Of a DNA stretch of 64,000 nucleotides, positions 22,217 to 63,244 are shown piece by piece; positions within the stretch are counted from its first letter, which is position 1; every line of letters starts with the position of its first letter. The DNA is taken from positions 186,001-250,000 of the forward strand of contig NIVC01000446.1 of the NCBI GenBank assembly GCA_002269645.1, written 5' to 3'. Made by a program: the position numbers and the translations under genes. Origin of the DNA: Macrostomum lignano. Taxonomy: Eukaryota. The notes beneath the pieces are model-generated. The model was not told the origin of the DNA, searched no databases, and saw nothing but the letters and a program-made list of their open reading frames with translations.

Positions 22217-27021
<4,805 letters not shown>

Positions 27022-40756: not shown

Positions 40757-43700
40757 TCAGTCTTTGCCGCCCTTCTTCTGCGACACGGTGCCGGGTTTCT
40801 GCTGGGCATCCGGGTGGCTGGCCAGCTCGTGCGGACAGGTGGACACTGGCGAGGCCAACAGAGTCTCCTTCAAATCAAAGAAGACGCCGGAATCGTCTTT
40901 AGTCAGGAAGGTGACGGCTTTGCCATTTTTACCTGCCCGACCGGTTCGACCGATTCGATGCGTGTAGGTCTGGATGTCCTTGGACATGTCGTAGTTGATC
41001 ACTAGCGACACGTCCTTGATGTCGATGCCGCGGCTGGCCACGTCGGTGGCTACAAGGATGTCTTTTGTGCCGGCTTTGAGACTGCTCAACGCGAAGTCGC
41101 GCTGCTCCTGACCTTTGTCGCCGTGAAGGGAGACCTGCGAGGCGAGAGCGGGAGAGAGGGGAAGAAGTGAGACCGCTAATTAAGGTAGCCGAGACTTTGG
41201 AATTGCAGGGAGCTTGATATGTGCAGGGAACTTATGGAATTGCAGGGAGCTTGATATGTGCAGGGAACTTATGGAATTGCAGGGAGCTTGATATGTGCAG
41301 GGAACTTATGGAATTGCAGGGAGCTTGATATGTGCAAGGAACTTGTAGAATTGTAGGGAGCTTGGGGAATTACAGGGAGCTTAATATGTGCAAGGAACTT
41401 GGGGAATAGCAGGGAGCTTGATATGTGCAAGGAACTTGTAGAATTGCAGGGAGCTTGGGGAATTACAGGGAGCTTGATATGTGCAAGGAACTTAGGGAAT
41501 AGCAGGGAGCTTGATATGTGCAAGGAACTTGGGTAATTGCAGGGTGCTTGGGGCATTGAAAGGAGCTTGGGGTTTTGGAGTGAGCTTGGGGTTGTGCAGG
41601 GAGCTTAGGGTTGTGTAGGGAGCTTGTTGTGCAGGGATCTTGGGGTTGGGTACGGAGCTTGTTATGTAGGGAGCTTGGTGTTGAACAGGGAGCTTGGGGT
41701 TGTGCAGGGAGCTTGGGGTTTTGCAGGGAGCTTGGTGTTGTGCAGGGAGCTTAGGGTTGTGTACGGAGCTTGTTATGCAGGGAGCTTGGGGTTGTACATA
41801 GGAGAATCGTAAAGATTATGGCGGACTTACGCTATTATATCCCATTCTCTCCAGGCCCTTAGTAAGCAAGTCGGCGCCCCGCTTATGATTAACAAAGATA
41901 ATGATCGGCGGATCGATGCCTCGCTCGAGCATCTGCTGCAGTTTGATTCGTTTCTGATCCTCGGACGTCATCATGATGACGGTCTGTTCCACCCGTTCGG
42001 TCGGCTTGCCAATGGAGCCGATGTACACGATGGCAGGCCTGCGCAGATAGGTCCGCGCGAGTCGCTCTACAGCAGGCGGCATTGTCGCTGTGAACATCAC
42101 CGTTTGACGGAATTTTCTTTTAGTAGCAAAATTGCTCATTAAGAAATCTTCGGATTCGACCGCTTCGGTGTCGGGCTTCTGGTTGCTAACTGGCAGGTAT
42201 TCGAGCACTTTCTGCACCTCGGGTTCGAATCCCATGTTGATCATCTTGTCGGCTTCGTCTAGGATAACGTAGGTGCACTGGCCGAGTACTAGGTAGCGAT
42301 TCTCGAGGACGTCCAACAGGCGGCCCGGTGTGGCGACAACAATCTCGCAGCCTTGGCGAAGCTTGAAGCCCTGGAGGATGGGGAAATCGGCGATTTCACC
42401 ATTCTAGGTGTTGAACTGCATGGATTTCTTAGAAAAATTATTATAGTGTAAAGAGATGAGATAGGGGATGAGGTAATTTCCCCTATTTCCCCTGAGGTAA
42501 TCATTGAGTAGAGATATGGTATTATTAAGTAGGGGTACGGGATCATTGAGTAGGGATATGGTATCATTTAGTAGGGATATGGGATCATTTAGTAGGGATA
42601 TGGGATCATTGAGTAGGGATATGGGATCATTTAGTAGGGATATGGGATCATTTAGTAGGGATATGGGATCATTGAGTAGGGATATGGGATTATTGAGTAG
42701 GGATATGGGATCATTTAGTAGGGATATGGGATCATTGAGTAGGGATATGGGATTATTAAGTAGGGGTACGGGATCATTGAGTAGGGATATGGGATCATTT
42801 AGTAGGGATATGGGATCATTTAGTAGGGATATGGGATCATTGAGTAGGGATATGGGATCATTGAGTAGGGATATGGGATCATTTAGTAGGGATATGGGAT
42901 CATTGAGTAGGGATATGGGATTATTGAGTAGGGATATGGGATCATTTAGTAGGGATATGGGATCATTGAGTAGGGATATGGGTTATTAAGTAGGGGTACG
43001 GGATCATTGAGTAGGGATATGGGATCATTTAGTAGGGATATGGGATCATTGAGTAGGGATATGGGATTATTAAGTAGGGGTACGGGATCATTGAGTAGGG
43101 ATATGGGATCATTTAGTAGGGATATGGGATCATTTAGTAGGGATATGGGATCATTGAGTAGGGATATGGGATTACTGAGTAGGGATATGGAATCATTGAG
43201 TAGAATTATGGGATTACTGAGTAGGGATATGGGATCATTGAGTAGGGATATGGGATTATTGAGTAGGGATATGGGATTATTGAGTAGGGATATGGGATTA
43301 TTGAGTAGGGATATGGGATTATTGAGTAGGGATATGGGATTATTGAGTAGGGATATGGGGATCAGTGAAAAGTAGAACAAACCCAGCCGTAAACGAACCT
43401 GTTCCTCTCGGCTCAGACCGCCGATCACGGATACAATCTTGATGCCTAAAGGCTGGCCAAATTTGTAGGCCTCCTCCTCAATCTGCTGGGCCAGCTCTCT
43501 TGTTGGCGCCATAATCAGAGCGTACGGACCCTGCTCGGCGTCTTCGGCTCGTTCCAATTTCGGCAAACTCATAATCCAGGTAAGCAGAGGGATTAAGAAG
43601 GCGGCGGTTTTACCCGAGCCGGTCTCGGCTACGCCAATAATATCGCGATTCTGTAGGCCGATAGGAATAGCCTGCCGCTGCACGGGGGTCGGCTCCTTGT

Positions 43701-45942
43701 AGCCAACAGCCTCAATGACCTCCACGAGTTCGCGGCGCAGTCCGGCCTCTGACCAGTTGCGCAAGGGCCTGGGAATTTTGCCGCCCTTAGTTGAGATGCT
43801 GAAATCTTCGCGAAATATTCGCCAATCGCGTTCGGTCATCTCGTCCAGGCCTTTGGCCGACCAGTGACGATCGTCGAACTTTTGACGCGCCTCGCGATTT
43901 AAGATATGATCGAGGCGCTTCTCCTCTTGAGCTTTCTGGGCGTCCGAGCGGCGGTCTTCCAGCAGCTTGGAGTAGAACCGGCCCATCTCCTTGCGCTGGG
44001 TCTTCACGTCAATGCCGGCCAGGTGACCCCGGCCGAATAGTTGCACCTGGGGTGTGAAATGGGGTGGCGGTTTAGCGATAGTTGCACCTGGGGTGTGATA
44101 TGGGGTGGCGGTTTAGCGATAGTTGCACCTGGGGTGTGATATGGGGTGGCGGTTTAGCGATAGTTGCACCTGGGGTGTGATATGGGGTGGCGGTTTAGCG
44201 ATAGTTGCACCTGGGGTGTGATATGGGGTGGCGGTTTAGCGATAGTTGCACCTGGGGTGTGATATGGGGTGGCGGTTTAGCGATAATTGCACCTGGGGTG
44301 TGATATGGGGTGGCGGTTTAGCGATAATTGCACATGGGTGTGATATGGGGTGGCGGGATGGCTATAATTGCACCTGGGTGTGATATGGGGCGGCGGGATG
44401 GCTATAATTGCACCTGGGGTGTGATATGGGGTGGCGGGATGGCTATAATTGCACCTGGAGTGTGATATGGGGTGGCGGGATGGCTATACTTGCACCTGGG
44501 TGTGATATGGGGTGGCGGGATGGCTATAATTGCACCTGGGTGTGATATGGGGAGGTGGGATGGCTATAATTGCACCTGGGGTGTGATATGGGGAGGTGGG
44601 ATGGCTATACTTGCACCTGGGTGTGATATGGGGTGGCGGGATGGCTATAATTGCACCTGGGGTGTGATATGGGGTGGCGGGATGGCTATAATTGCACCTG
44701 GGTGTGATATGGGGAGGTGGGATGGCTATAATTGCACCTGGGGTGTGATATGGGGAGGTGGGATGGCTATACTTGCACCTGGGTGTGATATGGGGAGGTG
44801 GGATGGCTATAATTGCACCTGGGGTGTGATATGGGGTGGCGGGATGGCTATACTTGCACCTGGGTGTGATATGGGGTGGCGGGATGGCGATAATTGCACC
44901 CGGGGTGTGATATAGGGCGGCGGGTTGGACAGTTAAACGTGGGACCAGCGGTGGCGTCAAAAATTGCAACTCTCAATTGACTACCGATATGTAGCGTAGT
45001 AAACAATAAGCTGAAATTCACCTGGTGCTTATCCTTATACAAGTTGTTATAATCCTGACTAGTATCCTCTGTGGCGTCCCATTCGAACACAAACTTTCGC
45101 TCGTTCTGCCTGCGCTGCTTCTTTCTAGGCTTCTTGCCGCCCAAATAGCGCTCGCGAATCGCTTCCAACACGCGACTGTCCGTCCCTGCGTCTCCGACTC
45201 CGCCCCGGTCCCGGCCTCGATCCCGGTCCCGATCGCGATCCCGATCACGATCACGACCACGGTCCCGGTCTCGATCTCCTCGACGGTCGCGGTCGCGGTC
45301 CCGATCCCGATCGCGGTCCCGATCCCGATCGCGGTCCCGATCCCGATCGCGGTCTCGATCCCGCCTGTCCGCCAGCTGCTGGTCCTGCTGCGCCTGCAAC
45401 TGCTGAGCCCGCATCATTTCCACCTGTTCCGCTCGCCTCTTCAAAGCTTCCGCCGCCCTCTCCTCCTTGGTGAGAAACTTCGGCTTGGCCTGCTCAGCTT
45501 CCAAAGCTTTCTTACGGGCCAGCACCTCTTCCAGACTCAGCGGCCCGGCTTTCTTTGCCGCCTGTTTGTCGTCATCTGCTGTCTTCTGCTTTTGCGACGA
45601 CTCGGCAGCAGACTCCGCCTCCTGCTGCTGGTCGGCGCTGCTCGATTTCTTAGATGCTTCTTTTTCTTTACGACGGCGTTTTCCGTCCGCCGCGTCGCGA
45701 TCTCGACTGCGGCTCCGGCTGCGATTGCGGCGCTTCTTCTCGCGCTTCTCTTTCTTCTCCTTCTTCTCCTTTTTTTCTTTTTTCTCTTTCCGACTCTTTG
45801 AAGTTGTTGCCGATGTTGCCTCGGGCTTTTCTTGCGCTGTAGCCGCCGCTTCTTCAGGCGGGGGCGGCTGCTGCTGCGACGGCGCCCTTGGCGAAGATGG
45901 TTGAGCACTGTCAACGTCCATTGAGTCGCCGTCGCTGGTCAT
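40757..45942 (-). CDS. DDX23: U5 snRNP DEAD-box helicase DDX23/Prp28, about 828 aa
   Basis: Exons (minus) 45942-45022, 44046-43399, 42370-41831, 41134-40757; all phase 0. RS/RD-rich N-terminus, [80 protein letters not shown]. An upstream in-frame ATG at 45999 is an alternative start. Confidence 0.96.
41195..41800. repeat. GGGAGCTT-core minisatellite (about 37-bp units decaying to about 20-bp units) in DDX23 intron 3
   Basis: Visible tandem units. Confidence 0.9.
42510..43360. repeat. 21-bp minisatellite (TCATTGAGTAGGGATATGGGA) in DDX23 intron 2
   Basis: Visible tandem units. Confidence 0.96.
44037..44915 (-). repeat. 40-41-bp minisatellite whose unit contains the 3' splice site plus the first 10 exon bases (CACACCCCAG|GTGCAACTAT)
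   Basis: Plus-strand unit ATAGTTGCACCTGGGGTGTGATATGGGGTGGCGGTTTAGCG, about 21 copies; the terminal unit overlaps the real acceptor at 44047. Confidence 0.95.
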
Positions 45943-46065
45943 TATCACCTTTTTGCCTACTGCTGAAATTTGTTGCGGCGAGAATTTTTGCATATTCATC
46001 TACTGTTAGTAGACTGTTGGAGACAGTATTGCAGATAAATTATGTCTGATTTTGTTATGGATAGA

Positions 46066-48300: not shown

Positions 48301-51300
48301 TCAGACGGGACGCACGTCAACTAGAAATAACTGACGTTTCAGAGCGCTCGGCAGAGGCAGCCGATCGATTTTGGCAGAATAATTAGCCGGCCCCAGCAGG
48401 GAGTGCATCTTCAAAGCGGTGGATAGCAACAGACTGGGAGGCTGGCTTAGCCATTCGGTTAAAGTTCGACCAGCTTCGATGGCTGATTCTGGCAGCTCGC
48501 TCTGATCCTGAGCATCAGTCGCTGTGGACAAGATGGCGCGTTTAATAGCGGCAATCCAAGCTGGGCCAGACGGCAGCTTGAACATGATGATGAATACCAG
48601 GTAGAGAATGCGGAGCTTAGCCAATGCCAGGCTCGATAGTGAGCCGCACAGAGACGAAGTTGGCGCAGGCGCAACGAGCAGTTCGGAGGCGCGCGCACCG
48701 CTGGCAGCCAGGCAGATTAGATCAGGTAGATTAATCCTGCGGAAAATGCAGATATTGGTTAAATTGTTTCTTAGGCAGTTGCCATGGGCATTTTAAAGCT
48801 GTTTGCTAGAGCATTGCCATGGGGATTTTTAAGCCAGTTGCTAGGGCGTTGCCATGGGGATTTTTAAGCTGTTTACTAGAGCATTGCCATGGGGATTTTT
48901 AATCCAGTTGCTAGGGCGTTGCCATGGGGATTTTTAAGCCAGTTGCTAGGGCGTTGCCATGGGGATTTTTAAGCCAGTTGCTAGGGCGTTGCCATGGGGA
49001 TTTTCAAGCAAGTTGCTAGGGCGTTGCTATGGGGATTTTTAAGCAAGTTGTTAGGGCGTTGCCATGGGGATTTTCAAGCAAGTTGCTAGAGCGTTGCCAT
49101 GGGGATTTTCAAGCAAGTTGCTAGGGCGTTGCTATGGGGATTTTCAAGCCAGATATATATAGTAATAAATTACTAAAGAAAAACAAATTAAACAAGCAGC
49201 AAACCTATCAGGCGGGAAGTAAGCGGCTAGAGAGAAATCCTTCGGATGATGCAAGCAGTTGTAGCCAAGCAAAGCCTCCATAGTGCCAAACGGGTCGGCT
49301 TTTGGGCCGCCGATGTCGCCGCGCAGGAAGGCTACGGCCGTGGACACGATAGACGGCATCACGGGAAGCGGATCGGCTCCGTTGCTTAGCAACAAGCGGA
49401 CGCAATCGGCGTGCGATTTGTCAGCCAGAATGCTAAGCGGGCTCTGGTGAGCGGTGTTGACAATGTTAATAGCCTGCGGACAGTGCAGCACCAGGGCTCG
49501 GATCTGAGAAGGCATTGGTCAGAGATCCGAACCTTTAAGACTCGTACTATGAGTAGTATGAGTACCATATTTTCTATAATCCATATTTTATCCGATAGAT
49601 CACTAATTTTATAGTGAATGGAATTCTTAGGATTTCAAGAATTCTACCAAATTGTTGAATTCGAATAATCTGTAAACATGGAGTCCTGAGGCTTAGCAGT
49701 GTAAAGGATAAAGGTAGAGACGTTGGTAATTTATTTGACTTTCAAAATTTACTAAATTCTGGCCTTTAAAACACCCAGCTATCCCAGTCAAAAGGAAACT
49801 ATCTAGATGACGGTAAACACGCCCGACTCTCGCGCAGAGACCCCGGGTTCGATTCCGCGCGCAAACGCATTCATTTGGGGCTTGTGTGCACGAAAATTAG
49901 CGGGTGGTTGTCCTGCGATTCATACACAAGCCGCAGAGAGTGTACAATCAGGAGTCAGCGGAATGGGCAGAATGGCCTCAGCTCTGGTGCTGTGGGACTG
50001 TCGCCGAAGGCATTGCGCCAGGGTGCCAGCAGCCCTTCTTCTGTGTTGAGTATTTTATACACTCCGTCACTTGAAAGCAAATCTCACTGTTTTGCACTTT
50101 GCAAAACAAAGGCAAATGCAAAGGCACGGAATGCTCAAGCGATGGGAAAAGTGTGTTGCTACAGGTGGGGGGGGCGTAGCCCAGCGGTAGCGCAGCTGCT
50201 CTGGTGTGCCAGCGACCCAGGCTCGATTCCAAGTGCAGTCACATTAATCTGGGGCTGAATTGGAATCTCGGCTTGGCTCTGCTCGTGCAATTAACGGCCT
50301 TGAGAGCCAACCCCCCAAGGCGCAGTGAAGTGTACATGCCTAACCATAAATAAAGTTAGGGCCGCTGTACACTCCTGTGTGAGTGTGTGCCTGCGTACGT
50401 ATCCGCGCGCTTGTATGCCTGCTCAGGGGAGTCGGCGGAATGGGCAGCAATGCCTCTCGCCGGTTGTGTGCCTATGTCGCTTAAAGTGCGCCAGGGTGCA
50501 CACAACCCCCTGCCTCTAATAAAAAGTGTTGCTACAGGTGGAGACTGTGTTGGGAAGGCTGCCTTGAAGGTTGATGATGAATGATGAATGATTACAATTC
50601 GTTTCTTTGAGGACAAAACATCGCTTTTTATTTCTTTGCTCTCGGATTAAGTGTCGGAACTTTCCGGACACACCTTGTATATCATACGCCAGAACACGGA
50701 GCTAATGAACCAATCACTCACAGCCTCGCAGTGGCCCTCGGTGGCCGCATAGACTAATGGCGTGTTGCCATTGGCATCGGTTGCAGTGCAGTCGGCTCCG
50801 TGCTGCAGCAGAAAGTCCACCCCGATGGCGTACAGAGCCGCGCAGTGCAGCGGGGTGCCATCGGAGCACGGATGCTCCATGACCGGGTCATCTTCGGGAC
50901 CGAGAAAGTCAAGATTAAAAGCGACAGGCTCCGGCTTCACGTTGACAGGATAGCCGCGTTGAACCAGAGCTCGCATCGCTTCCATAGCAACGCTACCCTG
51001 GCAACTATAGAGTCGCCTAGCGGCGCTAAGTACGCAATCGTTGCCAATAGCAACGCAGCCGGAGTCTAGCAGAGCAAACAAGCGATCTCCGGTCAGAGCC
51101 GGTGAGCTCTGAAGAAGATCTTGGAATAGAGCAGTCTGAGCTGGGCCGGACACCAGCGACAGAAGCTGTGGCGCATCCTTAGGACTGAACTTGGCCAGGT
51201 GATACCGGATGTGCCTGCAGAGCTTGTAGCGCAAATTCCTCTGCGTATTAAATCGATCCGGCCGAGTTTCGGCCGCCTCCGTTACCAAGGCCAACACGGC

Positions 51301-51444
51301 TGGTAAATTGCCATAGACAAAGGCCAGCTCTAATAATTTATCGAACGAAGCGGCATTCTCATAGGCTATGGTTCTTAATAGTTCTTTAAGCAGCTGGGGA
51401 CTGTGAGACTTCAGTATGTACTCCTGTTGGCGAGCGTCGGCCAT
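48301..51444 (-). CDS. Ankyrin-repeat and SOCS-box (ASB-like) protein, about 485 aa
   Basis: Exons (minus) 51444-50722, 49503-49205, 48736-48301; phases 0 and 2 consistent. Ankyrin motifs GTPLHCAA..LLQHGAD, GNTPLVYAATEGH, QSPL..CVRLLLSNGADP; C-terminal PPSLLLSTALKMHSLLG...IDRLPLPSALKRQL is SOCS-box-like. Confidence 0.88.
48780..49150. repeat. About 34-bp minisatellite (TTTTAAGCCAGTTGCTAGGGCGTTGCCATGGGGA) in ASB intron 2
   Basis: Visible tandem units. Confidence 0.93.
49820..49900 (+). mobile_element. SINE family B 5' (tRNA-like) fragment
   Basis: CCCGGGTTCGATTCC B-box followed by CATT..TTTGGGGCTTGTGTGC, as in the 12150 and 13465 copies. Confidence 0.55.
50169..50525 (+). mobile_element. Full-length tRNA-derived SINE (family B) with A-rich tail and 16-bp TSD, in ASB intron 1
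   Basis: A-box GTAGCCCAGCGGT, B-box GGCTCGATTCC, tail AATAAAAAA; direct repeat GTGTTGCTACAGGTGG at 50153-50168 and 50526-50541. Confidence 0.88.
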
Positions 51445-52868: not shown

Positions 52869-53741
52869 TCACAAAGCGCTATTCAGATAGTCAACAAACA
52901 GTTCAGTAACAGCGGCAGCATCAGTAGCCGCAGCAGCCGTGGCCGGTCTAGACCTCAGGCCAGTTAGAAACTGTTTCCTGCAGCGTTGCAATTCGCCCAT
53001 AGTCAGCTGCCTAGTATAGGTGAGCCTGCGCTTACACCCGGCAATGATGAGTTCGTCGCCTGGCAGGGCACCAGTCTGAGCAGCCATCACCCGTTGCATA
53101 ACGTCGCGCGTCGCTGCGTCGAAATTCGGCAGAAAATCGGAAGCAGCTGACGGCCTAGACTGAGTGGATTGGTTAGGCCGATCCGGCGCTCGATTGAACA
53201 GCGCCTGGCACACATTCGAGCATTGTAACGGTTCCGCGTTAGGTGCCAGAACTAGAGGCGAATCCCAACGATTAGTGGCATTTGGCTCTTCAAATCTTGC
53301 GCACAATTGGTCGAATAGATCCTCAGGATAGCGATCCTCTACAGGCCGTTGAGCGTTCCAACTTTTAGCCGTTTCTGGCGACACGTCGCAATGTATAAGG
53401 CATTGAGTATGTCTGAGATGCTTCACAGAGCAGTACAGTTCGTATCTGTAGCCTTTGATATAGTTTAACGAATCTAATATTACAACATCAGTTGGTGATG
53501 CCGCTAAGCGTTGTTCAGTTTCAGATTTCAAACACGAGCGCGCCTCTTTTTCGGCCGCGGCGCCAGCATAGATGGCGGTCTTGACTGCGGCGCCAGCTGT
53601 GGTAGAGCCGGATACACAGATCGATTCGTCTATGAGGCTGACCCGACGATCCGGGAACTTAACTGACAGGTACTCGATCAGCTGACGAGCTCGAGTCGAC
53701 TTGCCCGATGAGGGAAGTCCGCAAAGCAGGACCAGTGGCAG
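52869..53741 (-). CDS. KTI12: KTI12 (Elongator-associated P-loop protein), intronless; CTG occupies the initiator position
   Basis: Frame from 53741: (L)PLVLLCGLPSSGKSTRARQL...DSLNYIKGYRYELYC...RFEEPNATNRWDSPL; 873 nt including stop. KTI12 orthologs begin MPL[VI]. Confidence 0.92.
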   Translation of the reverse strand: MPLVLLCGLPSSGKSTRARQLIEYLSVKFPDRRVSLIDESICVSGSTTAGAAVKTAIYAGAAAEKEARSCLKSETEQRLAASPTDVVILDSLNYIKGYRYELYCSVKHLRHTQCLIHCDVSPETAKSWNAQRPVEDRYPEDLFDQLCARFEEPNATNRWDSPLVLAPNAEPLQCSNVCQALFNRAPDRPNQSTQSRPSAASDFLPNFDAATRDVMQRVMAAQTGALPGDELIIAGCKRRLTYTRQLTMGELQRCRKQFLTGLRSRPATAAAATDAAAVTELFVDYLNSAL

Positions 53742-55274: not shown

Positions 55275-58200
55275 CTAATCTTCAAAGTAGAAACGTGATC
55301 GTTTCCTCGGTGGAGACACGAATTCTGCTTCTTCTAGTGGAGGAGGAGGAGGCGGCGGGGGCGGCGGAGCCACAAAAGCAGCCTCAACAACAGACTTCGA
55401 CTTTCGACCGCGTCTATTCTTTGGCTGATCTGCAACAGCAGCAGAGATCGTGATTGGATCCACATTTTCTACATCTAGCTTCTCGTTGCTAGTTGAATTT
55501 TGGCTTGGCAACGGTTCTGTGGGAACTGCTGCTGCTGCCTTCGATTTGCGACCTCCGCGACGCTTCTTCTCGGCGATGCCATCAGCGGCAGCGGTGGCGG
55601 GCGGCTCGAGATCGTTGTTGGGATCTTGAATTAAATTTTAAAGTTGCTATGCGTGTAAGAACCTGATCAGTATTGCCTGATTGGTATTTCTATGCTGCTG
55701 GGTAACCAGTTGCTATGCAGCTATGCAAACAGTTGCTATGCGGCTTGATAAAACGTTTCTATGCAACTAGGTAACCCGTTGCTATGCAACTAGGAAAGCC
55801 ATTGCTATGCAACTAGGTAAACCGTTGCTATGCAGCTTGGTAACCTGTTGCTATGGCGCTTGGTAACCTGTTGCTATGGCGCTTGGTAACCTGTTGCTAT
55901 GGCACTTGGTAACCTGTTGCTATGGCGCTTGGTAACCTGTTGCTATGGCGCTTGGTAACCTGTTGCTATGGCGCTTGGTAACCTGATTCTAAGCAGTTAT
56001 GTAAACGTTGCTATGCAGCTTGATAACCCGTTGCTATGTAGCTTGGTAACCTGTTGCTATGCCGCTTGGTAACCTGTTGCTATGCAGCTTGGTAACCTGT
56101 TGCTATGCAACTAGGTAACCCGTTGCTATGCAACTAGGAAAGCCATTGCTATGCAGCTAGGTAAACCGTTGCTATGCCGCTTGGTAACCTGTTTCTAAGC
56201 AGTTATGTAAATAGTTGCTATGCAGCTTGATAACCCGTTGCTATGTAGCTTGGTAACCTGTTGCTATGCCGCTTGGTAACCTGCTGCTATGCCGCTTGGT
56301 AACCTGTTGCTATGCAGCTTGGTAACCTGTTGCTATGCAGCTTGGTAACCTGTTGCTATGCAGTTATGTAAACAGTTGCTATGCAACTAGGTAACCCGTT
56401 GCTATGCAGCTAGGTAACCTGTTGCTATGCTGCTAGGTAACCAATTGTTATGCAATTGCAGAACTGCTACTACTATCACTGACCAACTGACGTAATCCTC
56501 ATAATTTTACCATTCTCTCCGGATTTTTTCTTTCCATCAGCCTCGCAGTCGGCAGTCCCGCCGCCAACGTCAATCTGGCCGGACAACACGGCTTCGTAGT
56601 CCAATTCAACTGGAGCACCGCCAGGGACCGCCAATCCGGCGTCATTTGTTTTACCTGTCGATTTCTTTTTACGACCCCGTCGTTTCTCGTCAGTTTTCTT
56701 TGACGATTCCTCTTCGTGGACGCAGCTACTATTAGTAGTAGCATTATTGTCGGTTGGGGGTGCAGCCGTGTTTTCATCGGCATCGGTGGCGACAGCAGCT
56801 GATGGTTCCTCCTCTTCGGGTCGATAGTCTGTCCGGAAGTTGTACACAACCGGTTCGGCGGCAGCTTCTTCCCATGGCGCCGGCGCCTGATCTGGCAGGC
56901 GCTTGAACGCAAACTTGTAGACGCCGAAACCCGCCATGCCGGTGGTGTACCACCATTTCTCTACTCTGTAGAGACCGTCGTATCTGCGATTTGGGATTTA
57001 ATAATGCTCTGCTCATTCATGAGATACTTTACATGTATTGTTAAGAAAGGGAAACTAATATGATGGGATAATTGGGGAGATACGGGAAGGATAATGTAGT
57101 TGGGATAAATTGGGAATAATGGGAAAAATCATATAGTTGGGATAATTGGGCATAATGGAAAGAACAATGTAGTTGGGATAATTGGCGATAATGGGAAAAA
57201 TCATGTAGCTGGGATAATTGGGGATAATGGGAAAAATCATGTAGCTGGGATAATTGGGGATAATGGGAAAAATCATGTAGCTGGGATAATTGGCGATAAT
57301 GGGAAAAATCATGTAGCTAGGATAATTGGGGATAATGGGAAAAATCATGTAGCTGGGATAATTGGCGATAATGGGAAAAATCATGTAGCTGGGATAATTG
57401 GCGATAATGGGAAGAATCAAGCAGTTAAGATAATTGGGCAATGAGGATTATGGAAAGAATCATCATGTAGCTGGGATAATTGGCGATAATGGGAAGAATC
57501 ATGTAGCTGGGATAATTGGCGATAATGGGAAAAATCATGTAGCTGGGATAATTGGCGATAATGGGAAGAATCATGTAGCTGGGATAATTGGCGATAATGG
57601 GAAGAATCATGTAGCTGGGATAATTGGGGATAATGGGAAAAATCATGTAGCTGGGATAATTGGGGATAATGGGAAAAATCATGTAGCTGGGATAATTGGG
57701 GATAATGGGAAAAATCATGTAGCTGGGATAATTGGCGATAATGGGAAAAATCAAGCAGTTAAGATAATTGGGGAATGAGGATTATGGAAAGAATCATCAT
57801 GTAGCTGGGATAATTGGGCATAATGGGAAGAACCATATAGTTGGGATAATTGGGGATAAAGATAAAATCATGTAGTTGGGAACTGGGAAGAATCAAGCAG
57901 GCGGGATAATTCCTCACCTATAATAGCCTTCAGGCGGGGCAAACTCGCTGCGCAACTTATAACCCCGAATAACTCGGACAGACTGTCCATTCTCGGCCGA
58001 GCGCACCAGGGCGGCATTATTCCTGCTCAAAGCTTGATCCTTAGTCTGCGGCGCTGTGCGCAGATTTTTCGGATTCGATTTGGTGCCTTTCAAATCGCGA
58101 CCGCCCTCGCCAGTGTAGGTGAAATGGCTGCCCAGATCGATGTCGTCCTCGTAGCCACCGGACAGGGCGATCGAGTAGGCCCCGTCCGTGCCGCCGTGGA

Positions 58201-59610
58201 TGCCGGCCACCGTTGGCCGGTGCAGTCCCGCTAGGCAGGCGTCAATTCGAGTCTCGAACAGGGTGCCCACGGCAACGCCGGCTATGGCGCCGTAGATGTT
58301 CGGCCGGTTTTTGGCCACCTTGGGTCGGTCGAATACACTGCTACCGCTGGCAGCGGCTGCTCGGCGGGCTCGGCGACTGCCGCCTGGGGGCCGGAGGGGG
58401 GGGGTTGAGACAGCGGATTAAAGAGACTATTGTACTAGCGAAGGATTCACACCTGTGTAATTTAACGATTCAAAACTGGTCCATACACTGTAGATTCACA
58501 CCTGGTCACACATTTGTGAGATTCACACCTGGTCACACATCTGTGAGATTTACACCTGGTCACACTATAAGATTCACACCTGGTCACACATTTGTGAGAT
58601 TCACACCTGGTCACACTATAAGATTCACACCTGGTCACACATCTATAAGATTCAAACCTGGTCACACTATAAGATTCACACCTGGTCACACATCTATAAG
58701 ATTCAAACCTTGTCACACTATAAGATTCACACCTGGTCACACTAAAAGATTCACACCTGGTCACACATCTATAAGATTCACACCTAATTTCAGTATAAGA
58801 ATCAAACTAAATCATTATATAAGATTTACACTAGGTCACAAATCTAAGATTCACACTAGGTCACAAATCTATAAGATTCACACTAGGTCACAAATCTATA
58901 AGATTCACACTAGGTTACAGATCTATAAGATTCACACTAGGTCACTAAAATATTCACTTTAAGTCACATGTATAAGATTCAGTCCAGTCCACTGCAAGAC
59001 GCACAGCGCCCACCGTAAGATTCACACTAAATACGAGCTAGGCCTAAACTAGCTAAAAATCACACAAATAGATAGCATGTAAGACACCTCAGCAGCCTTC
59101 CATCTACTACTCACCGCCCTCGCCATCGCTGTCCTCATCTTTGCTGTCGTACTCATCATCATCGTCGTCAGAGCCGCGACCGCGCCGACCCGACGACGGC
59201 ACCCAGTTCTCCTCGCCGCTGTCGTCTTTGCCGTAGCCGTCGCACTGGCCAATGTACTGCGGCGCCGGCCGGCCCTCAAGCCTGCGACTCGACCGCCTGG
59301 GCGCTTCGTCGAGTTCAGCCGCCAAACGGCGAGCTAAAACGGCGTCGGAATCGGCGTCCTGGACAGCTTCGGGCTCGCCGGCTGCATCAGATGATCGGCT
59401 GACAGGTTTCGGCTTGTTAGACTGTCGGCGATTCTTATTATTAGAGATCAAAGACTGCCGCTTCTTAGACGCCGCAGCCGTTGGCAGCTTAGAAATCGAA
59501 GGCTTTGTCCATCGTTTCGGTGGCGAATTTAAAGCGCCGAGTTCGCCAAGAATGCGCCGATTTTCGGCGAGATTTTTCAGACGACGCTGTTCGTATTCGC
59601 TTAGAGACAT
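55275..59610 (-). CDS. Stand-alone SRA/YDG-domain protein (UHRF1-type SRA without UBL/TTD/PHD/RING), about 594 aa
   Basis: Exons (minus) 59610-59115, 58383-57918, 56983-56511, 55624-55275; phases 1/2/1 consistent, 1785 nt. SRA motifs HRPTVAGIHG, SIALSGGYEDDIDLG..FTYTGEGGRDL, VRVIRG, RYDGLYRV, FKRLPDQAPAPW. The exon 3 donor (GTAAAA) is the weakest part of the model. Confidence 0.9.
55695..56455. repeat. 23-bp minisatellite (TTGCTATGCAGCTTGGTAACCTG) in SRA intron 3
   Basis: Visible tandem units. Confidence 0.94.
57050..57900. repeat. 36-bp minisatellite (GGAAAAATCATGTAGCTGGGATAATTGGCGATAATG) in SRA intron 2
   Basis: Visible tandem units; 12-aa period in the ORF track. Confidence 0.95.
58490..58990. 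repeat. 24-27-bp minisatellite (AGATTCACACCTGGTCACACTATA) in SRA intron 1
   Basis: Visible tandem units. Confidence 0.92.
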
Positions 59611-59724
59611 GGCTTATTAGCATGCAATGATGGATGAATGTGCGATTGTAGCTAAGGTTGGTGTAACAACAAGTACTGAATGAATTTAAATTGAACCATT
59701 TATTCTGAAGCCTAAATCAAATCT

Positions 59725-60575
59725 TTCCTGAAGTAGACCCTGAATCTATTCTGAAGTATTACCTGAATCTAGCCTGAAGTAGACCCTGAATCTAGCCTAA
59801 AGTAGACCCTGAATCTAGCCTGAACTAGACCCTGAATCTAGCCTGAAGTAGACCCTGAATCTAGCCTGAACTAGACCCTGAATCTAGCCTGAAGTAGACC
59901 CTGAATCTAGCCTGAAGTAGACCCTGAATCTAGCCTGAAGTAGACCCTGAATCTAGCCTGAAGTAGACCCTGAATCTAGCCTGAAGTAGACCCTGAATCT
60001 AGCCTGAAGTAGACCCTGAATATAGCCTGAAGTAGACCCTGAATCTAGCCTGAAGTAGACCTGAATCTAGCCTGAAGTAGACCCTGAATCTAGCCTAAAC
60101 TAGACCCTGAAACTAGCCTGAACTAGACCCTGAATCTAGCCTGAAGTAGACCCTGAATCTAGCCTGAAGTAGACCCTGAATCTAGCCTGAAGTAGACCCT
60201 GAATCTAGCCTGAACTAGACCCTGAATCTAGCCTGAACTAGACCCTGAATCTAGCCTGAAGTAGACCCTGAATCTAGCCTGAAGTAGACCCTGAATCTAG
60301 CCTGAAGTAGACCCTGAATCTAGCCTGAACTAGACCCTGAATCTAGCCTGAAGTAGACCCTGAATCTAGCCTGAAGTAGACCCTGAATCTAGCCTGAAGT
60401 AGACCCTGAATCTAGCCTGAAGTAGACCCTGAATCTAGCCTGAAGTATTACCTGAATCTAGCCTGAAGTAGACCCTGAATCTAGCCTGAACTAGACCCTG
60501 AATCTAGCCTGAAGTAGACCCTGAATCTAGCCTGAACTAGACCCTGAATCTAGCCTGAAGTAGAGGCTGAAACTA
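59725..60575. repeat. 23-bp minisatellite (AGTAGACCCTGAATCTAGCCTGA) between ALG13 and the SRA gene
   Basis: Visible tandem units. Confidence 0.96.
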
Positions 60576-60966
60576 GACTTGAGAACTAAATCAAACCCGA
60601 TTTAGTCATACAGAAATCTATTTAATAATTCAGGCTAACAATTTGAGTTTTTTAAACTAGAAAAAGAAATTTTTAAGCTGCAAAATCCTGCATCTTTTAG
60701 AAGACAACAATGCCGCAAGCAGAAAAACTCAGCACTTGTATTTATTGAAACTTATTAACTTAAGAGAGCTAACTTCCATATACTAAAAATGGTTTGTAAT
60801 TGTAATACACTAAATTGCTATAACACACGTACAATATTGGTCTGTAAATTATATCAACGCGATCGAAGATCTTTTACAATTCGACTGTTTATTGATTAAA
60901 AGTACATATATTGTACTTTTGCAAAAAATGATGCAAAGAATTATCAATGAAAATAACTGACGCTGT

Positions 60967-63104
60967 CTAATCCCCATCGCCGAATCCCATAACGCTGTCA
61001 AGGAATTTGGCGAATTTCTCCGGTTCGCCTCGAGGAAACGGTTTCAACTGGCTTACGGGGGTCAGGCGTTTAAGGGCGTCTTCAAGGTCGACGCATACCG
61101 TTGTGTCCAGGTGTCCGTCTCTGGAACAGGGGACACATTAATTACTTATTAGTTTTATATTATATTTGTTGGCGTGGCTGTTAGGGGTCATAGTCTATGA
61201 CTGTTAGGGTTAATTGTCTATGGCTGTTAGGGTTAATTGTCTATGGCTGTTAGGGGTAATTGTCTATGGCTGTTAGGGGTATTTGTATATGGCTGTTGGG
61301 GTCATAGTCTGGCTGTTGAGGCCATAACCTATGGCTGTTTGGGTCATGATTTATGGCTTTTAGGGGTCATAGTCTATAGCTGTTAGGGGTCATAGTCTAT
61401 GGCTGTTAGGGGTCATACTCTATGGCTGCTGGGGTAATTGTCTATGGCTGTTGGGGGTCATAGTCTATGACTGTTAGGGGGTCATAGTCTATGGCTGTTG
61501 GGGTAATTGTCTATGACTGTTAGGGGGGTCATAGTCTATGGCTGTTAGGGGTAATTGTTTATGGCTGTTAGGAGTAATTATCTATGGCTGTTGGGGGTAT
61601 TTGTCTATGGCTGTTGTGGTCATAGTCTGGCTGTTGATAACCTATGGCTGTTTGGGTCATGATTTATGGCTTTTAGGGGTCATAGTCTATAGCTGTTAGG
61701 GGTCATAGTCTATGGCTGTTGGGGTAATTGTCTATGACTGTTAGGGGGGTCATAGTCTATGGCTGTTAGGGGTAATTGTCTATGGCTGTTAGGAGTAATT
61801 ATCTATGGCTGTTGGGGGTATTTGTCTATGGCTGTTGGGGTCATAGTATTTGTCTATGGCTGTTGTGGTCATAGTCTGGCTGTTGAGGCCATAACCTATG
61901 GCTATGGCTGTTTGGGTCATGATTTATGGCTTTTAAGGGTCATAGTCTATAGCTGTTAGGGGTCATAGTCTATGGCTGCTGGGGTAATTGTCTATGACTG
62001 TTAGGGGGGTCATAGTCTATGGCTGTTGGGGGTCATTGTCTATGACTGTTAGGAGTAATTGTCTATGGCTGTTAGGAGTAATTGTCTATGGCTGTTAGGG
62101 GTCATAGTCTATGGCTGTTGGGGGTCATAGTCTATGGCTGTTTGGGTCATGATTTATGGCTTTTTGGGGTCATAGTCTATGGCTGCTGGAGTAATTGTCT
62201 ATGGCTTTTAGGGGTCATAGTCTATGGCTGTTGGGGGTCATAGTCTATGGCTATTGAGGTAATTGTCTATGGCTGTTGGGGGGTCATAGTCTATGGCTGT
62301 TGGGGGTCATAGTCTATGGCTGTTAGGGGGTCATAGTCTATGGCTGTTGGTGGGTCATAGTCTATGCTAATTTGGGTCAGAGTGGAGTCTATGGCTGTTG
62401 GGGGTCATAGTCTATGGCTATTGAGGTAATTGTCTATGGCTGTTGGGGGGTCATAGTCTATGGCTGTTTGGGGTCATAGTCTATGGCTGTTAGGGGGTCA
62501 TAGTCTATGGCTGTTGGTGGGTCATAGTCTATGCTAATTTGGGTCAGAGTGGAGTCTATGGCTGTTGGGGGTAATTGTCTATGGCTGTTGGGAGTCATTG
62601 TCTATGGCTGCTAGGGGTCATAGTCTATGATTGTTGGGGTCATATATTATGGCGGTTGGGGGTCTTCGAAGGGGTCATAATCCACTGCAATTCAAAGCTA
62701 CAAAACATGGAAATTGAATTTATTACTTGCCTAGCAACCCGGTGAGCCAGTTCAGTTTGATGATTATGCATCAAATCGTCGTTGACAACAACTAGTAAAC
62801 GTTTTCCGGCATTCAATGACTCCAACACGCTGCCAGCTCCGGCGTGGCTAATCACTAATCCTGCGGCGGCGATATCGGCAGCCAGGGACGGCTTAAATCG
62901 ATAGTAACTAACGGAGAACCGACCCTCTAATGGGTAATCCCGAGCAGTGTGAGCTACAGGTTCGTAATCGCCTCGACCTATTTGCATAACTAAGCCGTGA
63001 TAGCCCAGCTGGTCGCAGAGGATTTTATGCAATTCCGGAGAATCTAATCGGCGGATTAAAGCGTCGAAAGAAGTTGTGCCGACAGTGGCAAATACGTTGG
63101 GCAT
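60967..63104 (-). CDS. ALG13: ALG13 (UDP-GlcNAc transferase catalytic subunit, short form), 175 aa, with a GC-AG intron
   Basis: Exons (minus) 63104-62731 and 61120-60967: MPNVFATVGTTSFDALI...QIGRG...LVISHAGAGSVLESL...LLVVVNDDLMHNHQTELAHRVAR|DGHL...LKPFPRGEPEKFAKFLDSVMG. The frame joins through donor AG|GCAAGT. Confidence 0.93.
61180..62640. repeat. About 22-bp minisatellite (GGGGTCATAGTCTATGGCTGTT) filling the ALG13 intron
   Basis: Visible tandem units. Confidence 0.95.
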
Positions 63105-63244
63105 AGCGACTGGCTCTTTGTTATTGGTCTTTATCTTTGCTGCACTGTCTGAAGTTGTCCTGGTGTCTTGGTCTGGAAAGCGTTGAGTGAAGAATATCAT
63201 TGTATGGAAATCTGGCAGTTACCCTTGTGTCCGCCAATTTCACT

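What the first reader, a model, noticed from the sequence alone, without database searches (positions are those of the whole stretch)
55275..59610. SRA-only protein with a CDCA7-like N-terminal helix: candidate alternative hemimethyl-CpG adaptor for HELLS/DDM1
Seen: N-terminus MSLSEYEQRRLKNLAENRRILGELG, a disordered basic/acidic linker, an intact SRA domain, then RRGRK-type basic motifs and a terminal RKRSRFYFED; none of UHRF1's UBL, TTD, PHD or RING domains. Knowledge: UHRF1 SRA flips 5mC of hemimethylated CpG; CDCA7 senses hemimethylated CpG with zf-4CXXC_R1 and recruits the remodeler HELLS via an N-terminal helix. Human CDCA7 as I recall has EKRALNIKQNKAMLAKL, the same RxxN[IL]xxNxx[MI]LxxL spacing as QRRLKNLAENRRILGEL here. 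Inference: a CDCA7 analogue in which SRA replaces the zinc finger, i.e. a possible unrecognised branch of the methylation maintenance or reading machinery.
Basis: partly seen in the sequence, partly recalled or inferred. Interest (0 to 1): 0.8.

Follow-up and report, generated by a model that had tools for sequence, protein, structure and literature searches.

The report
SRA-only methyl-DNA reader with CDCA7/WDR76-type helix
This is an intact flatworm gene for a protein that has only the methyl-cytosine-flipping SRA domain of UHRF1, and its conserved N-terminal helix is the same motif found in two known partners of the chromatin remodeler HELLS (WDR76 and, more distantly, CDCA7), so it may be an unrecognised HELLS adaptor, although binding has not been tested.

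Summary
Window 55275-59610 (minus strand) holds a 4-exon GT-AG gene encoding 594 aa, identical to Macrostomum lignano PAA82841.1. SAD_SRA is its only Pfam domain (E=5.7e-47), and the fold model best matches UHRF1 SRA bound to hemimethylated CpG.

The gene is not an orphan. It belongs to an old animal and fungal family of SRA-only proteins. A likely member, Cryptococcus Uhf1, binds hemimethylated DNA in published work.

About 110 of 120 relatives carry the N-terminal motif xSxYExxRLKNIExNxxxLxxLGL. A profile of that motif searched against 1.84 billion proteins finds:
- WDR76-like WD40 proteins (E~1e-6); WDR76 is a HELLS/MUS-30/Irc5 partner in three kingdoms
- one zf-4CXXC_R1 (CDCA7-type) protein (E~1e-7)
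- PHD, bromodomain and Myb proteins

In all 120 mammalian CDCA7 sequences, the profile's best match is the published HELLS-binding helix (9-11 bits; 0 of 5000 shuffles; HHalign P=9e-6). A second motif, RRSxR, usually follows the helix.

Published tables list M. lignano with DNMT1, DNMT3, UHRF1 and HELLS but no CDCA7.

The HELLS-adaptor reading is plausible and apparently unpublished, but it rests on sequence and literature only. No interaction was tested. Nucleosome binding or dimerisation remain live rivals.

The parts
55275..59610 (-). Whole gene, ATG to stop: SRA-only UHRF1-like protein, 594 aa (M. lignano PAA82841.1)
   Evidence: Gene model. Product identical to P0122. NCBI gene span of 4336 bp on NIVC01000446.1.
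59115..59610 (-). Exon 1 (aa 1-165 plus 1 nt); donor GTGAGT
57918..58383 (-). Exon 2 (aa 166-320 plus 2 nt); acceptor ...CCCCAG, donor GTGAGG
56511..56983 (-). Exon 3; acceptor ...TCGCAG, donor GTAAAA
55275..55624 (-). Exon 4 including the stop codon; acceptor ...TTCAAG
59536..59604 (-). N-terminal amphipathic helix motif, aa 3-25 (LSEYEQRRLKNLAENRRILGELG). Conserved face: Y6, R10, N13, N17, L21, L24.
   Evidence: 34.4 bits against the leave-one-out family profile. AF2 helix at aa 5-23 with pLDDT about 90. The motif is in 110 of 120 family members. It is shared with WDR76-like and zf-4CXXC_R1 proteins. It is related to the CDCA7 HLBH.
59272..59298 (-). Second conserved motif RRSSRRLEG, aa 105-113 (family consensus RRSxRxxGK)
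   Evidence: R106, S108 and R110 are invariant or nearly so in alignment A2. The same R[RK][ST]xR follows the helix in 20 of 45 non-SRA motif-bearing proteins, against 2.0 expected.
57918..58294 (-). SRA domain, first part (aa 196-320). It contains the thumb (HRPTVAGIHG), the 5mC pocket (GGYEDD, FTYTG) and the finger.
   Evidence: Pfam PF02182, E=5.7e-47. UHRF1 SRA chains at E~1e-37. Foldseek best match 3f8j_B, E=1.5e-17.
56887..56983 (-). SRA domain, second part (aa 321-353), after intron 2
58046..58087 (-). Extended 'NKR-type' finger GTKSNPKNLRTAPQ (aa 265-278). N272 and R274 align with N489 and R491 of UHRF1, and the loop is 6 residues longer than in UHRF1.
   Evidence: Alignment to UHRF1. 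P270, N272, L273, R274, T275, A276 and Q278 are invariant in the family.
56662..56685 (-). Basic motif KRRGRKKK (aa 421-428), AT-hook-like but without Pro
   Evidence: the region is disordered in AF2
55539..55568 (-). Basic motif KKRRGGRKSK (aa 498-507)
55395..55415 (-). Basic motif RRGRKSK (aa 549-555). The poly-Pro tract and terminal RKRSRFYFED follow.

Best explanation
The locus is an expressed-type, intact gene of the flatworm Macrostomum lignano. It encodes a member of an ancient opisthokont family of SRA-only, UHRF1-like proteins, the kind represented by Cryptococcus Uhf1.

Shown here:
- The SRA domain keeps the thumb, the 5mC pocket and an extended N-x-R finger.
- It models onto UHRF1 SRA bound to hemimethylated CpG.
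- The family-defining N-terminal module is an amphipathic helix followed by an RRSxR motif. The same module heads WDR76/Cmr1-like WD40 proteins and at least one zf-4CXXC_R1 protein.
- The helix is significantly related to the CDCA7 HELLS-binding helix.

Inferred:
- The SRA domain flips out 5mC at hemimethylated CpG in accessible DNA.
- The helix docks onto the N-terminal coiled coil (CC2) of HELLS, as the CDCA7 helix does. This would bring the remodeler to newly replicated methylated DNA.
- The RRSxR motif may act as an arginine anchor on the nucleosome acidic patch.
- The lineage-specific C-terminal tail with three RRGRK motifs adds non-specific DNA affinity or nuclear import.
- M. lignano is reported to have HELLS, DNMT1, DNMT3 and UHRF1 but no CDCA7. 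There, this protein and WDR76 would be the available HELLS adaptors.

I put the identity of the protein as a hemi-mCpG-reading SRA-only family member at about 0.9. I put the HELLS-docking step at about 0.45.
For: - Gene and protein.
- SRA: Pfam E=5.7e-47. UHRF1 SRA chains at E~1e-37, with V224, Y243, D246, Y255, T256, N272 and R274 aligned to the thumb, pocket and finger. AF2 pLDDT is about 90 for aa 190-355. Foldseek best match is mouse UHRF1 SRA with hemimethylated CpG, E=1.5e-17, TM 0.72.
- Family: 404 hits. The best 120 are SRA-only proteins from sponge, cnidarian, molluscs, annelids, echinoderms, hemichordates, amphioxus, crustaceans, hemimetabolous insects, chytrids, Glomeromycota and Basidiomycota, including Kwoniella. 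The motif is in 110 of 120 members.
- Motif elsewhere: 883 representatives at E<=1e-3 among 1.84 billion proteins. They include P0262, named 'WD repeat-containing protein 76-like' by NCBI, whose propeller is DDB2-like. They also include the WD40 protein P0253 and P0180, which carries PF10497 zf-4CXXC_R1.
- Domains on motif-bearing proteins are all chromatin-related: SRA, PHD, WD40, zf-4CXXC_R1, bromodomain, Myb.
- CDCA7: the best profile match in 120 of 120 mammalian CDCA7 is aa 117-132, inside the published helix (aa 112-130). It scores 9-11 bits, single-sequence E=5.9e-5, and 0 of 5000 shuffles reach it. HHalign gives probability 83%, P=9.3e-6.
- Bipartite module.
- Literature:
  - Deleting the CDCA7e helix abolishes HELLS binding (PMC11343034).
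  - HELLS-WDR76 association is reported in Neurospora, yeast and human (PMC4714748, bioRxiv 650028).
  - Uhf1 binds hemimethylated DNA and promotes 5mC (bioRxiv 149385).
  - The M. lignano gene set and 5mC status come from PMC10538959 and PMC11292947.
  - Daphnia, thrips and Cryptococcus are also listed with HELLS but without CDCA7, and they carry this family.
Against: - No interaction was predicted or measured.
- The match to vertebrate CDCA7 is only 9-11 bits over 16 columns. It lacks the Y-E start and LGL end of the motif.
- It is not known which part of WDR76 binds HELLS, and the human WDR76-HELLS association is salt-labile.
- The motif is also on PHD, bromodomain and Myb proteins, so the shared partner could be something other than HELLS.
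- Most species with this family also have CDCA7 and full UHRF1, so the protein is not simply a replacement.
- uhf1 deletion alone barely changes 5mC in Cryptococcus.
- I could not confirm that Cryptococcus Uhf1 itself carries the motif; only its Kwoniella relatives were seen.
- The RRSxR motif was not detected in human CDCA7.
Confidence: 0.5

Rival explanations
1. The helix plus RRSxR module is a nucleosome- or histone-binding module, or binds some other shared chromatin partner, rather than HELLS. The SRA-only protein would then simply be tethered to chromatin and would read hemimethylated CpG for a methyltransferase (DNMT1 in animals, Dnmt5 in Basidiomycota).
For: - The non-WD40 N-terminal half of WDR76 (aa 1-310) carries its histone, SIRT1, GAN and Ku interactions (bioRxiv 650028).
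- WDR76 is an acidic-patch interactor by mass spectrometry and in an AlphaFold-Multimer screen (bioRxiv 2024.06.26.600687).
- RRSxR resembles the arginine anchor of the CENP-C motif (from memory).
- The module sits on many reader types: PHD, bromodomain, Myb.
- Uhf1 acts in the Dnmt5 maintenance pathway.
Against: - The helix aligns residue for residue on its conserved face (F/Y, R, N, N, L, L) with the CDCA7 helix, whose deletion abolishes HELLS binding.
- HELLS-WDR76 co-purification is conserved across fungi and mammals.
- The two functions are not exclusive. The helix could bind HELLS while RRSxR binds the acidic patch.
Confidence: 0.25
2. The N-terminal helix is a homo- or hetero-dimerising leucine zipper, as the CDCA7/CDCA7L segment was first annotated. 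It would make the SRA protein bivalent or let it pair with other motif-bearing proteins, with no remodeler involved.
For: - The conserved positions are spaced 4-3-4-4-3, with Asn at core positions, as in dimeric zippers.
- The CDCA7 segment was originally called a leucine zipper that binds c-Myc (PMC10538959).
- Some proteins carry 2-4 tandem copies.
- The Uhf1 EMSA shows multiple complexes.
Against: - The helix is short, about 19-23 residues.
- It ends in an invariant Gly (LGL), which caps the helix.
- The CDCA7 helix is now assigned to HELLS CC2 by deletion analysis.
Confidence: 0.12
3. The resemblance to CDCA7 is convergent or due to chance, and the motif has no specific partner. The protein is just a minimal 5mC reader.
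For: - The CDCA7 match is weak in bits.
- Short amphipathic helices are common.
Against: - 0 of 5000 shuffles reach the score, and the hit falls exactly on the functional helix.
- Y6 and N17 are invariant and E7, R10, N13 and L21 nearly so, from sponges to fungi.
- The same motif is found at library-wide significance in WDR76-like and zf-4CXXC_R1 proteins.
Confidence: 0.05

Closest known systems
Cryptococcus neoformans Uhf1 (CNAG_00677), an SRA-only 'Uhrf1-like' protein
   Same: - SRA is the only recognisable domain, with no Tudor, PHD or RING.
- Close relatives in Kwoniella (P0097, P0113) align over aa 1-360 of the window protein at 41-60% identity. They carry the same N-terminal helix and RRSxR motif.
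- Uhf1 binds hemimethylated DNA selectively.
   Different: - The flatworm protein has an extra disordered tail of about 235 aa with three RRGRK motifs.
- It sits in a DNMT1/DNMT3/UHRF1 genome rather than a Dnmt5-only one.
- The sequence of Uhf1 itself was not inspected here.
UHRF1 / UHRF2 (Np95, ICBP90)
   Same: - Same SRA fold (Foldseek E=1.5e-17, 45% identity).
- Thumb Val, pocket Tyr/Asp/Tyr/Thr and finger Asn and Arg are conserved.
   Different: - No UBL, tandem Tudor, PHD or RING, so no ubiquitin-ligase route to DNMT1.
- The finger loop is 6 residues longer (GTKxNPKNLRTAPQ).
- The long UHRF1 insertion after the finger helix is missing.
CDCA7 / CDCA7L / CDCA7e (HELLS activator, hemimethylated-CpG sensor)
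   Same: - A non-enzymatic reader of hemimethylated CpG combined with an N-terminal amphipathic helix.
- Window residue n aligns with human CDCA7 residue n+108. Y6/F114, R10/R118, N13/N121, L14/I122, N17/N125, L21/L129 and L24/L132 match.
   Different:
- Vertebrate CDCA7 lacks the Y-E and LGL ends of the motif, and no RRSxR was detected in it.
- HELLS binding is shown only for CDCA7.
WDR76 / Cmr1 (DDB2-like WD40 protein; partner of HELLS, MUS-30 and Irc5)
   Same: - Same N-terminal helix motif at library-wide significance (P0262 43.7 bits, E=1.5e-6; P0253 E=1.4e-6).
- A following basic R-S-x-R-L motif (KRSLRLLRK in P0262).
   Different: - A WD40 propeller takes the place of SRA.
- Its role lies in the DNA-damage response, not demonstrably in 5mC reading.
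- The region of WDR76 that binds HELLS has not been mapped.
Plant SUVH and VIM/ORTH SRA proteins
   Same: SRA domain homology (E 1e-24 to 1e-29 to SUVH4/5/6/9).
   Different: Those are fused to SET, or to PHD and RING. No such domains are present here.

Membership tests
SRA-only UHRF1-like family (Uhf1 type) | SAD/SRA domain as the only globular domain | tested here: met
   Pfam finds only PF02182 at aa 196-353, E=5.7e-47. AF2 shows only a helix at aa 5-23 and the SRA domain as ordered.
SRA-only UHRF1-like family (Uhf1 type) | N-terminal motif xSxYExxRLKNIExNxxxLxxLGL | tested here: met
   34.4 bits against the leave-one-out profile. The motif is present in 110 of 120 relatives.
SRA-only UHRF1-like family (Uhf1 type) | RRSxRxxGK motif between the helix and the SRA domain | tested here: met
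   RRSSRRLEG at aa 105-113. R106, S108 and R110 are conserved in A2.
SRA-only UHRF1-like family (Uhf1 type) | Extended finger GTKxNPKNLRTAPQxxDQ | tested here: met
   aa 265-282. The invariant columns P270, N272, L273, R274, T275, A276, Q278 and Q282 are all kept.
SRA-only UHRF1-like family (Uhf1 type) | Selective binding of hemimethylated CpG | not testable with these tools
   Shown only for Cryptococcus Uhf1 by EMSA (bioRxiv 149385). Here it is inferred from conserved pocket and finger residues.
UHRF1 proper | UBL, tandem Tudor, PHD and RING domains flanking SRA | tested here: not met
   None of these was found at E<=1. The protein is not a UHRF1 orthologue. Funabiki et al. list a separate M. 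lignano UHRF1, PAA75535.
UHRF1 proper | SRA 5mC pocket, thumb and NKR finger | tested here: met
   V224, Y243, D246, Y255, T256, N272 and R274 align to the UHRF1 residues. The residue roles come from established structures (2zkd, 3f8j, 3clz).
CDCA7 family | zf-4CXXC_R1 (PF10497) hemimethylation-sensing zinc finger | tested here: not met
   No PF10497 hit. The sequence has no Cys cluster.
CDCA7 family | HELLS-binding helix (HLBH) | tested here: inconclusive
   A sequence relationship is supported: 9-11 bits at the HLBH in 120 of 120 mammalian CDCA7, 0 of 5000 shuffles, HHalign P=9.3e-6. Only mammalian CDCA7 could be sampled.
CDCA7 family | Physical binding to and activation of HELLS/DDM1 | not testable with these tools
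   No multimer prediction was available, and the M. lignano HELLS sequence could not be retrieved.
WDR76/Cmr1 family | N-terminal helix motif followed by a basic RSxRL motif | tested here: met
   The same profile hits the WDR76-like P0262 at 43 bits. Its KRSLRLLRK is weakly matched by the second-motif profile.
WDR76/Cmr1 family | C-terminal DDB2-like seven-bladed WD40 propeller | tested here: not met
   No WD40 hit in the window protein.

The most novel reading that the evidence does not exclude
The N-terminal helix, usually followed by RRSxR, is a portable docking module for HELLS/DDM1, possibly combined with an acidic-patch anchor. It is shared by CDCA7, WDR76/Cmr1, the SRA-only family and a set of PHD, bromodomain and Myb proteins. 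HELLS would therefore be served by a family of interchangeable chromatin-mark adaptors. In lineages that kept HELLS but lost CDCA7 (Macrostomum, Daphnia, thrips, Basidiomycota such as Cryptococcus), the SRA-only protein would be the hemimethyl-CpG adaptor that targets or activates the remodeler.
Probability: 0.35. Interest if true: 0.85.

Novelty: new variant of a known kind. Interest (0 to 1): 0.66.

Why it matters
HELLS/DDM1 is the one remodeler needed for maintaining DNA methylation, and human HELLS is inactive without CDCA7.

Three questions remain open:
- What recruits or activates HELLS in the many species that have it but lack CDCA7?
- What is the conserved HELLS-WDR76 association for?
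- What do the widespread SRA-only 'UHRF1-like' proteins do?

A shared, sharply conserved N-terminal module on CDCA7-type, WDR76-type and SRA-only proteins would tie these three questions together. It also makes them directly testable with helix-face point mutants and pull-downs. M. lignano (RNAi, transgenesis), Daphnia and Cryptococcus are all workable systems.

If the module binds something else, it is still an unannotated, ancient chromatin motif. It has no Pfam model, yet 883 representative proteins match it.

Tried and rejected
1. PDB sequence searches with the N-terminus and with the motif profile gave only chance-level hits. No solved chain carries the motif.
2. The homologue search with human CDCA7 returned only mammals. 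Invertebrate, plant and fungal CDCA7 helices therefore could not be tested.
3. The search with P0180, the zf-4CXXC_R1 protein with a perfect motif, found only itself. Its organism and family breadth remain unknown.
4. The Wassing et al. supplement holds no sequence text for the HLBH alignments.
5. A profile of the second motif (RRSxRxxGK) finds nothing significant in human CDCA7. I therefore dropped the idea that 'TRSRSRILG' in CDCA7 is its counterpart.
6. The WDR76 truncation study does not say which half binds HELLS.
7. Single-sequence AF2 of P0218 (helix motif plus an uncharacterised domain) gave pLDDT 42 and is unusable for fold search.
8. Pseudogene or annotation artefact: rejected. The reading frame is intact across four GT-AG exons, all family-invariant residues are kept, and there are near-identical paralogous copies.
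9. Bacterial or contaminant origin: rejected. The gene has spliceosomal introns, is identical to an M. lignano contig, and has eukaryotic neighbours.
I treat these as leads only and do not count them as evidence.


Full report
**What is at the locus.**
The region 55275-59610 holds one minus-strand gene with four exons: 59610-59115, 58383-57918, 56983-56511 and 55624-55275. All three introns are GT-AG.
- The spliced product is 594 aa and is identical to Macrostomum lignano PAA82841.1, a 'hypothetical protein / YDG domain-containing protein'.
- The 4336-bp gene sequence of contig NIVC01000446.1 occurs identically in the window, and the annotated gene span equals the finding's coordinates.
- Two further 597-aa copies, at least 90% identical to each other, exist in the assembly (PAA52439, which is 98% identical to the window protein, and PAA54848).

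**The SRA domain.**
Pfam finds only SAD_SRA (aa 196-353, E=5.7e-47). Nothing else appears at E<=1, so UBL, Tudor, PHD and RING are absent.
- The nearest solved sequences are UHRF1 SRA domains (E~1e-37), followed by UHRF2 and plant SUVH proteins.
- In that alignment these elements are kept: the thumb (HRPTVAGIHG, V224), the 5mC pocket (GGYEDD with Y243 and D246; FTYTG with Y255 and T256), and the finger Asn and Arg (N272, R274).
- The residue roles come from the published UHRF1-DNA structures, not from a test here.
- The finger loop is six residues longer than in UHRF1 (GTKSNPKNLRTAPQ). This longer loop is invariant across the family.
- An AF2 model built on a 33-sequence alignment has pLDDT of about 90 for aa 190-355 and for an N-terminal helix at aa 5-23. 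The rest is disordered.
- Foldseek places the model closest to mouse UHRF1 SRA bound to hemimethylated CpG: 3f8j_B, E=1.5e-17, target TM 0.72, rmsd 2.4 A, 45% identity.

**The family.**
The protein is not an orphan. A search of 5.8 billion proteins gave 404 hits, and 119 of the best 120 carry SRA as their only recorded Pfam domain, at about 330-500 aa (the exception, P0095, also has a kinesin domain and looks like a fused gene model).
- Animal sources: sponge, octocoral, molluscs, annelids, nemertean, brachiopod, echinoderms, hemichordates, amphioxus, Daphnia, barnacle, spiders, pycnogonids, thrips, hemipterans and odonates.
- Fungal sources: chytrids, Glomeromycota, Endogone and many Basidiomycota, including Kwoniella.
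- Many hits align over aa 1-360 of the query, which includes the N-terminus.
- The alignment shows three conserved blocks: the helix motif (Y6, E7, R10, N13, N17, L21, L24, G25), an RRSxRxxGK motif (R106, S108, R110), and the SRA domain.
- 110 of 120 relatives carry the helix motif at 10 bits or more. The exceptions are broken gene models, a few members with weakened motifs (for example P0078 and P0100), and two odonates in which the motif has decayed.
- Cryptococcus Uhf1 is an SRA-only 'Uhrf1-like' protein from the same clade as Kwoniella. It was shown to bind hemimethylated DNA selectively and to promote 5mC in parallel with Clr4 (bioRxiv 149385).
- Funabiki et al. also flag SRA-without-RING 'UHRF1' homologues in their survey (PMC10538959).
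- The kind of protein is therefore known. Its N-terminal module has not been discussed in any paper I could find.

**Is the helix CDCA7-like?**
The CDCA7 HELLS-binding helix (HLBH) is defined experimentally. Deleting aa 74-105 of Xenopus CDCA7e abolishes HELLS binding, and the helix is predicted to pack on HELLS CC2 in animals and plants (PMC11343034). In human CDCA7 it is placed at aa 112-130 (PMC12885070).
- I built a 25-position profile of the SRA-family motif (A1).
- I scored it against 120 real mammalian CDCA7 sequences.
- In every one, the best match is KRALNIKQNKAMLAKL, human aa 117-132, inside the HLBH. Scores are 9-11 bits and the single-sequence E-value is 5.9e-5.
- None of 5000 composition-preserving shuffles of human CDCA7 reaches 9 bits.
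- Profile-profile comparison gives 83% probability and P=9.3e-6.
- The ungapped alignment (window residue n to CDCA7 residue n+108) matches Y6/F114, R10/R118, N13/N121, L14/I122, N17/N125, L21/L129 and L24/L132. These lie on one helical face with 4-3-4-4-3 spacing.
It remains a weak match, tested only on mammals.

**Where else the motif occurs.**
Searching the profile against 1.84 billion representative proteins gave 883 hits at E<=1e-3. The listed hits are not only SRA proteins.
- P0180 has a perfect motif (46 bits), then RRSAR, then a zf-4CXXC_R1 domain (PF10497, E=1.6e-7). This is a CDCA7-type architecture.
- P0262 has the motif at aa 78-102 (43 bits), then KRSLRLLRK, then a WD40 propeller. 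NCBI names it WD repeat-containing protein 76-like (Macrosteles), and its propeller is closest to DDB2.
- P0253 is another motif-plus-WD40 protein.
- Among the 79 hits of 100 aa or more, the recognisable chromatin-type domains are SRA (5), PHD (4), WD40 (2), zf-4CXXC_R1 (1), bromodomain (1) and Myb (1).
- The motif is N-terminal in most cases: 82% start within the first 40 aa.
- In 20 of 45 non-SRA proteins it is followed 19-61 aa later by R[RK][ST]xR, against 2.0 expected.
- The unit is thus a bipartite module attached to different chromatin or DNA readers.

**Why HELLS is the leading candidate partner.**
Two architectures that carry the module are independently known HELLS partners.
- One is CDCA7, as described above.
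- The other is WDR76:
  - Neurospora MUS-30 (LSH/DDM1) co-purifies reciprocally with WDR76, and the two genes interact genetically.
  - Yeast Cmr1 proteomics recovered Irc5.
  - Human WDR76 and HELLS co-purify reciprocally, though the association is salt-labile (PMC4714748, bioRxiv 650028).
- Funabiki et al. list M. lignano with DNMT1, DNMT3, DNMT2, UHRF1 and HELLS, with CDCA7 'not detected' and 5mC present. Low-level 5mC is also noted in PMC11292947.
- The same 'HELLS present, CDCA7 absent' state is listed for Daphnia pulex, two thrips, Cryptococcus and Coprinopsis. All are lineages that have the SRA-only family.
- One anecdote of co-loss: the odonate members have a decayed motif, and the odonate Ladona is listed without HELLS.
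- These are consistency arguments, not tests.

**What weakens the HELLS reading.**
- No complex prediction or experiment was possible.
- The segment of WDR76 that binds HELLS is unmapped.
- The N-terminal half of WDR76 also binds histones and other partners.
- WDR76 and HELLS are both reported acidic-patch interactors. The module, or its RRSxR part, could therefore be a nucleosome anchor.
- The motif is on several other reader types.
- Most species with the family also keep CDCA7 and UHRF1.
- uhf1 deletion alone has almost no effect on 5mC.
- A dimerising zipper is also possible.

**Most likely mechanism.**
- Shown: an intact SRA reader of the UHRF1 type, carrying a conserved N-terminal helix plus RRSxR module that it shares with WDR76-like and CDCA7-type proteins.
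- Inferred: the SRA domain flips 5mC at hemimethylated CpG in linker or unwrapped DNA. The helix docks on HELLS CC2. RRSxR may contact the acidic patch. The RRGRK tail, which is specific to Macrostomum, adds DNA affinity or nuclear import.
- Confidence: about 0.9 that the protein is a hemi-mCpG-reading member of the SRA-only family, and about 0.45 that it docks to HELLS.

**Novelty and verdict.**
The gene itself is an annotated hypothetical protein and a new member of a known kind, the SRA-only UHRF1-like proteins. The new element is that its family-defining N-terminus is the same module found in WDR76/Cmr1 and is related to the CDCA7 HLBH. This suggests a portable HELLS-adaptor module. I found no paper making this link, although subscription journals are outside the library. 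The idea is worth an AlphaFold-Multimer run and a pull-down, and it is scored as interesting but unproven.

Noticed in passing
window 55690-56454, 57064-57881, 58492-58945, 59720-60576, 61175-61499: Each of the three introns of the gene is largely filled by a different tandem array: 23 bp x33, 36 bp x22, and 27/51 bp x9-18. Two more 23-bp arrays lie just upstream of the ATG (x37, 94% matches; x14). Similar repeat-derived ORFs occur all over the window.
   Followed up: partly
window 62640-63200(-), 52869-53531(-), 50647-51444(-), 41816-45999(-), 11598-14114(+), 23131-23709(-): Neighbouring genes by Pfam:
- ALG13-like Glyco_tran_28_C
- KTI12
- an ankyrin-repeat protein
- a DDX23/PRP28-like DEAD-box helicase with an RS/RD-rich N-terminus
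- three tandem F5/8 type C (galactose-binding-like) paralogues
- a carboxylesterase exon
The first three are also the called neighbours on the M. lignano contig.
   Followed up: partly
M. lignano proteins PAA52439, PAA54848, PAA82841 (P0001, P0121, P0122); UniProt model P0002: Three near-identical copies of the gene (594-597 aa, at least 90% identical; P0001 is 98% identical to the window protein) sit on different contigs. This fits the duplicated M. lignano genome. One UniProt model (P0002, 534 aa) is frame-shifted through the start of the SRA domain and looks like a mis-splice.
   Followed up: no
P0082 (Hetaerina), P0091 (Ischnura): The odonate members of the family keep the SRA domain, but their N-terminal motif has decayed (EYSCVLRGNIINKLNFL; below 0 bits). 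The odonate Ladona fulva is listed without HELLS and without CDCA7 in Funabiki et al. This may be a case of co-loss.
   Followed up: partly
P0210, P0242 (fungal); P0124, P0128, P0147, P0194, P0229: Some proteins carry the helix motif two to four times in tandem. Two fungal proteins have two copies followed by an SRA domain.
   Followed up: no
P0218, P0172, P0140 (P0140 is from the oomycete Aphanomyces euteiches): The helix motif, with RRSxR in P0172 and P0140, is fused to a shared uncharacterised domain of about 150 aa (..LLFxRxxxxxYVxCGRLxYxxH..PxxFxWxLxD). It has no Pfam or PDB match. Single-sequence AF2 was too poor (pLDDT 42) to classify it. It could be another DNA or chromatin reader.
   Followed up: partly
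P0186, P0203, P0205, P0175; P0222, P0233, P0249, P0217: Two further motif-bearing groups end in small Cys-rich segments: 'CPECDGP..RF.C.DP.C.HE', and 'CP.C.G......G..RKH.PC'. They have no family assignment.
   Followed up: no
window protein aa 105-113, and the family motif RRSxRxxGK: The second conserved motif resembles the arginine anchor of the CENP-C motif (from memory). WDR76 and HELLS are both reported nucleosome acidic-patch interactors (bioRxiv 2024.06.26.600687). The motif may therefore be an acidic-patch anchor.
   Followed up: no
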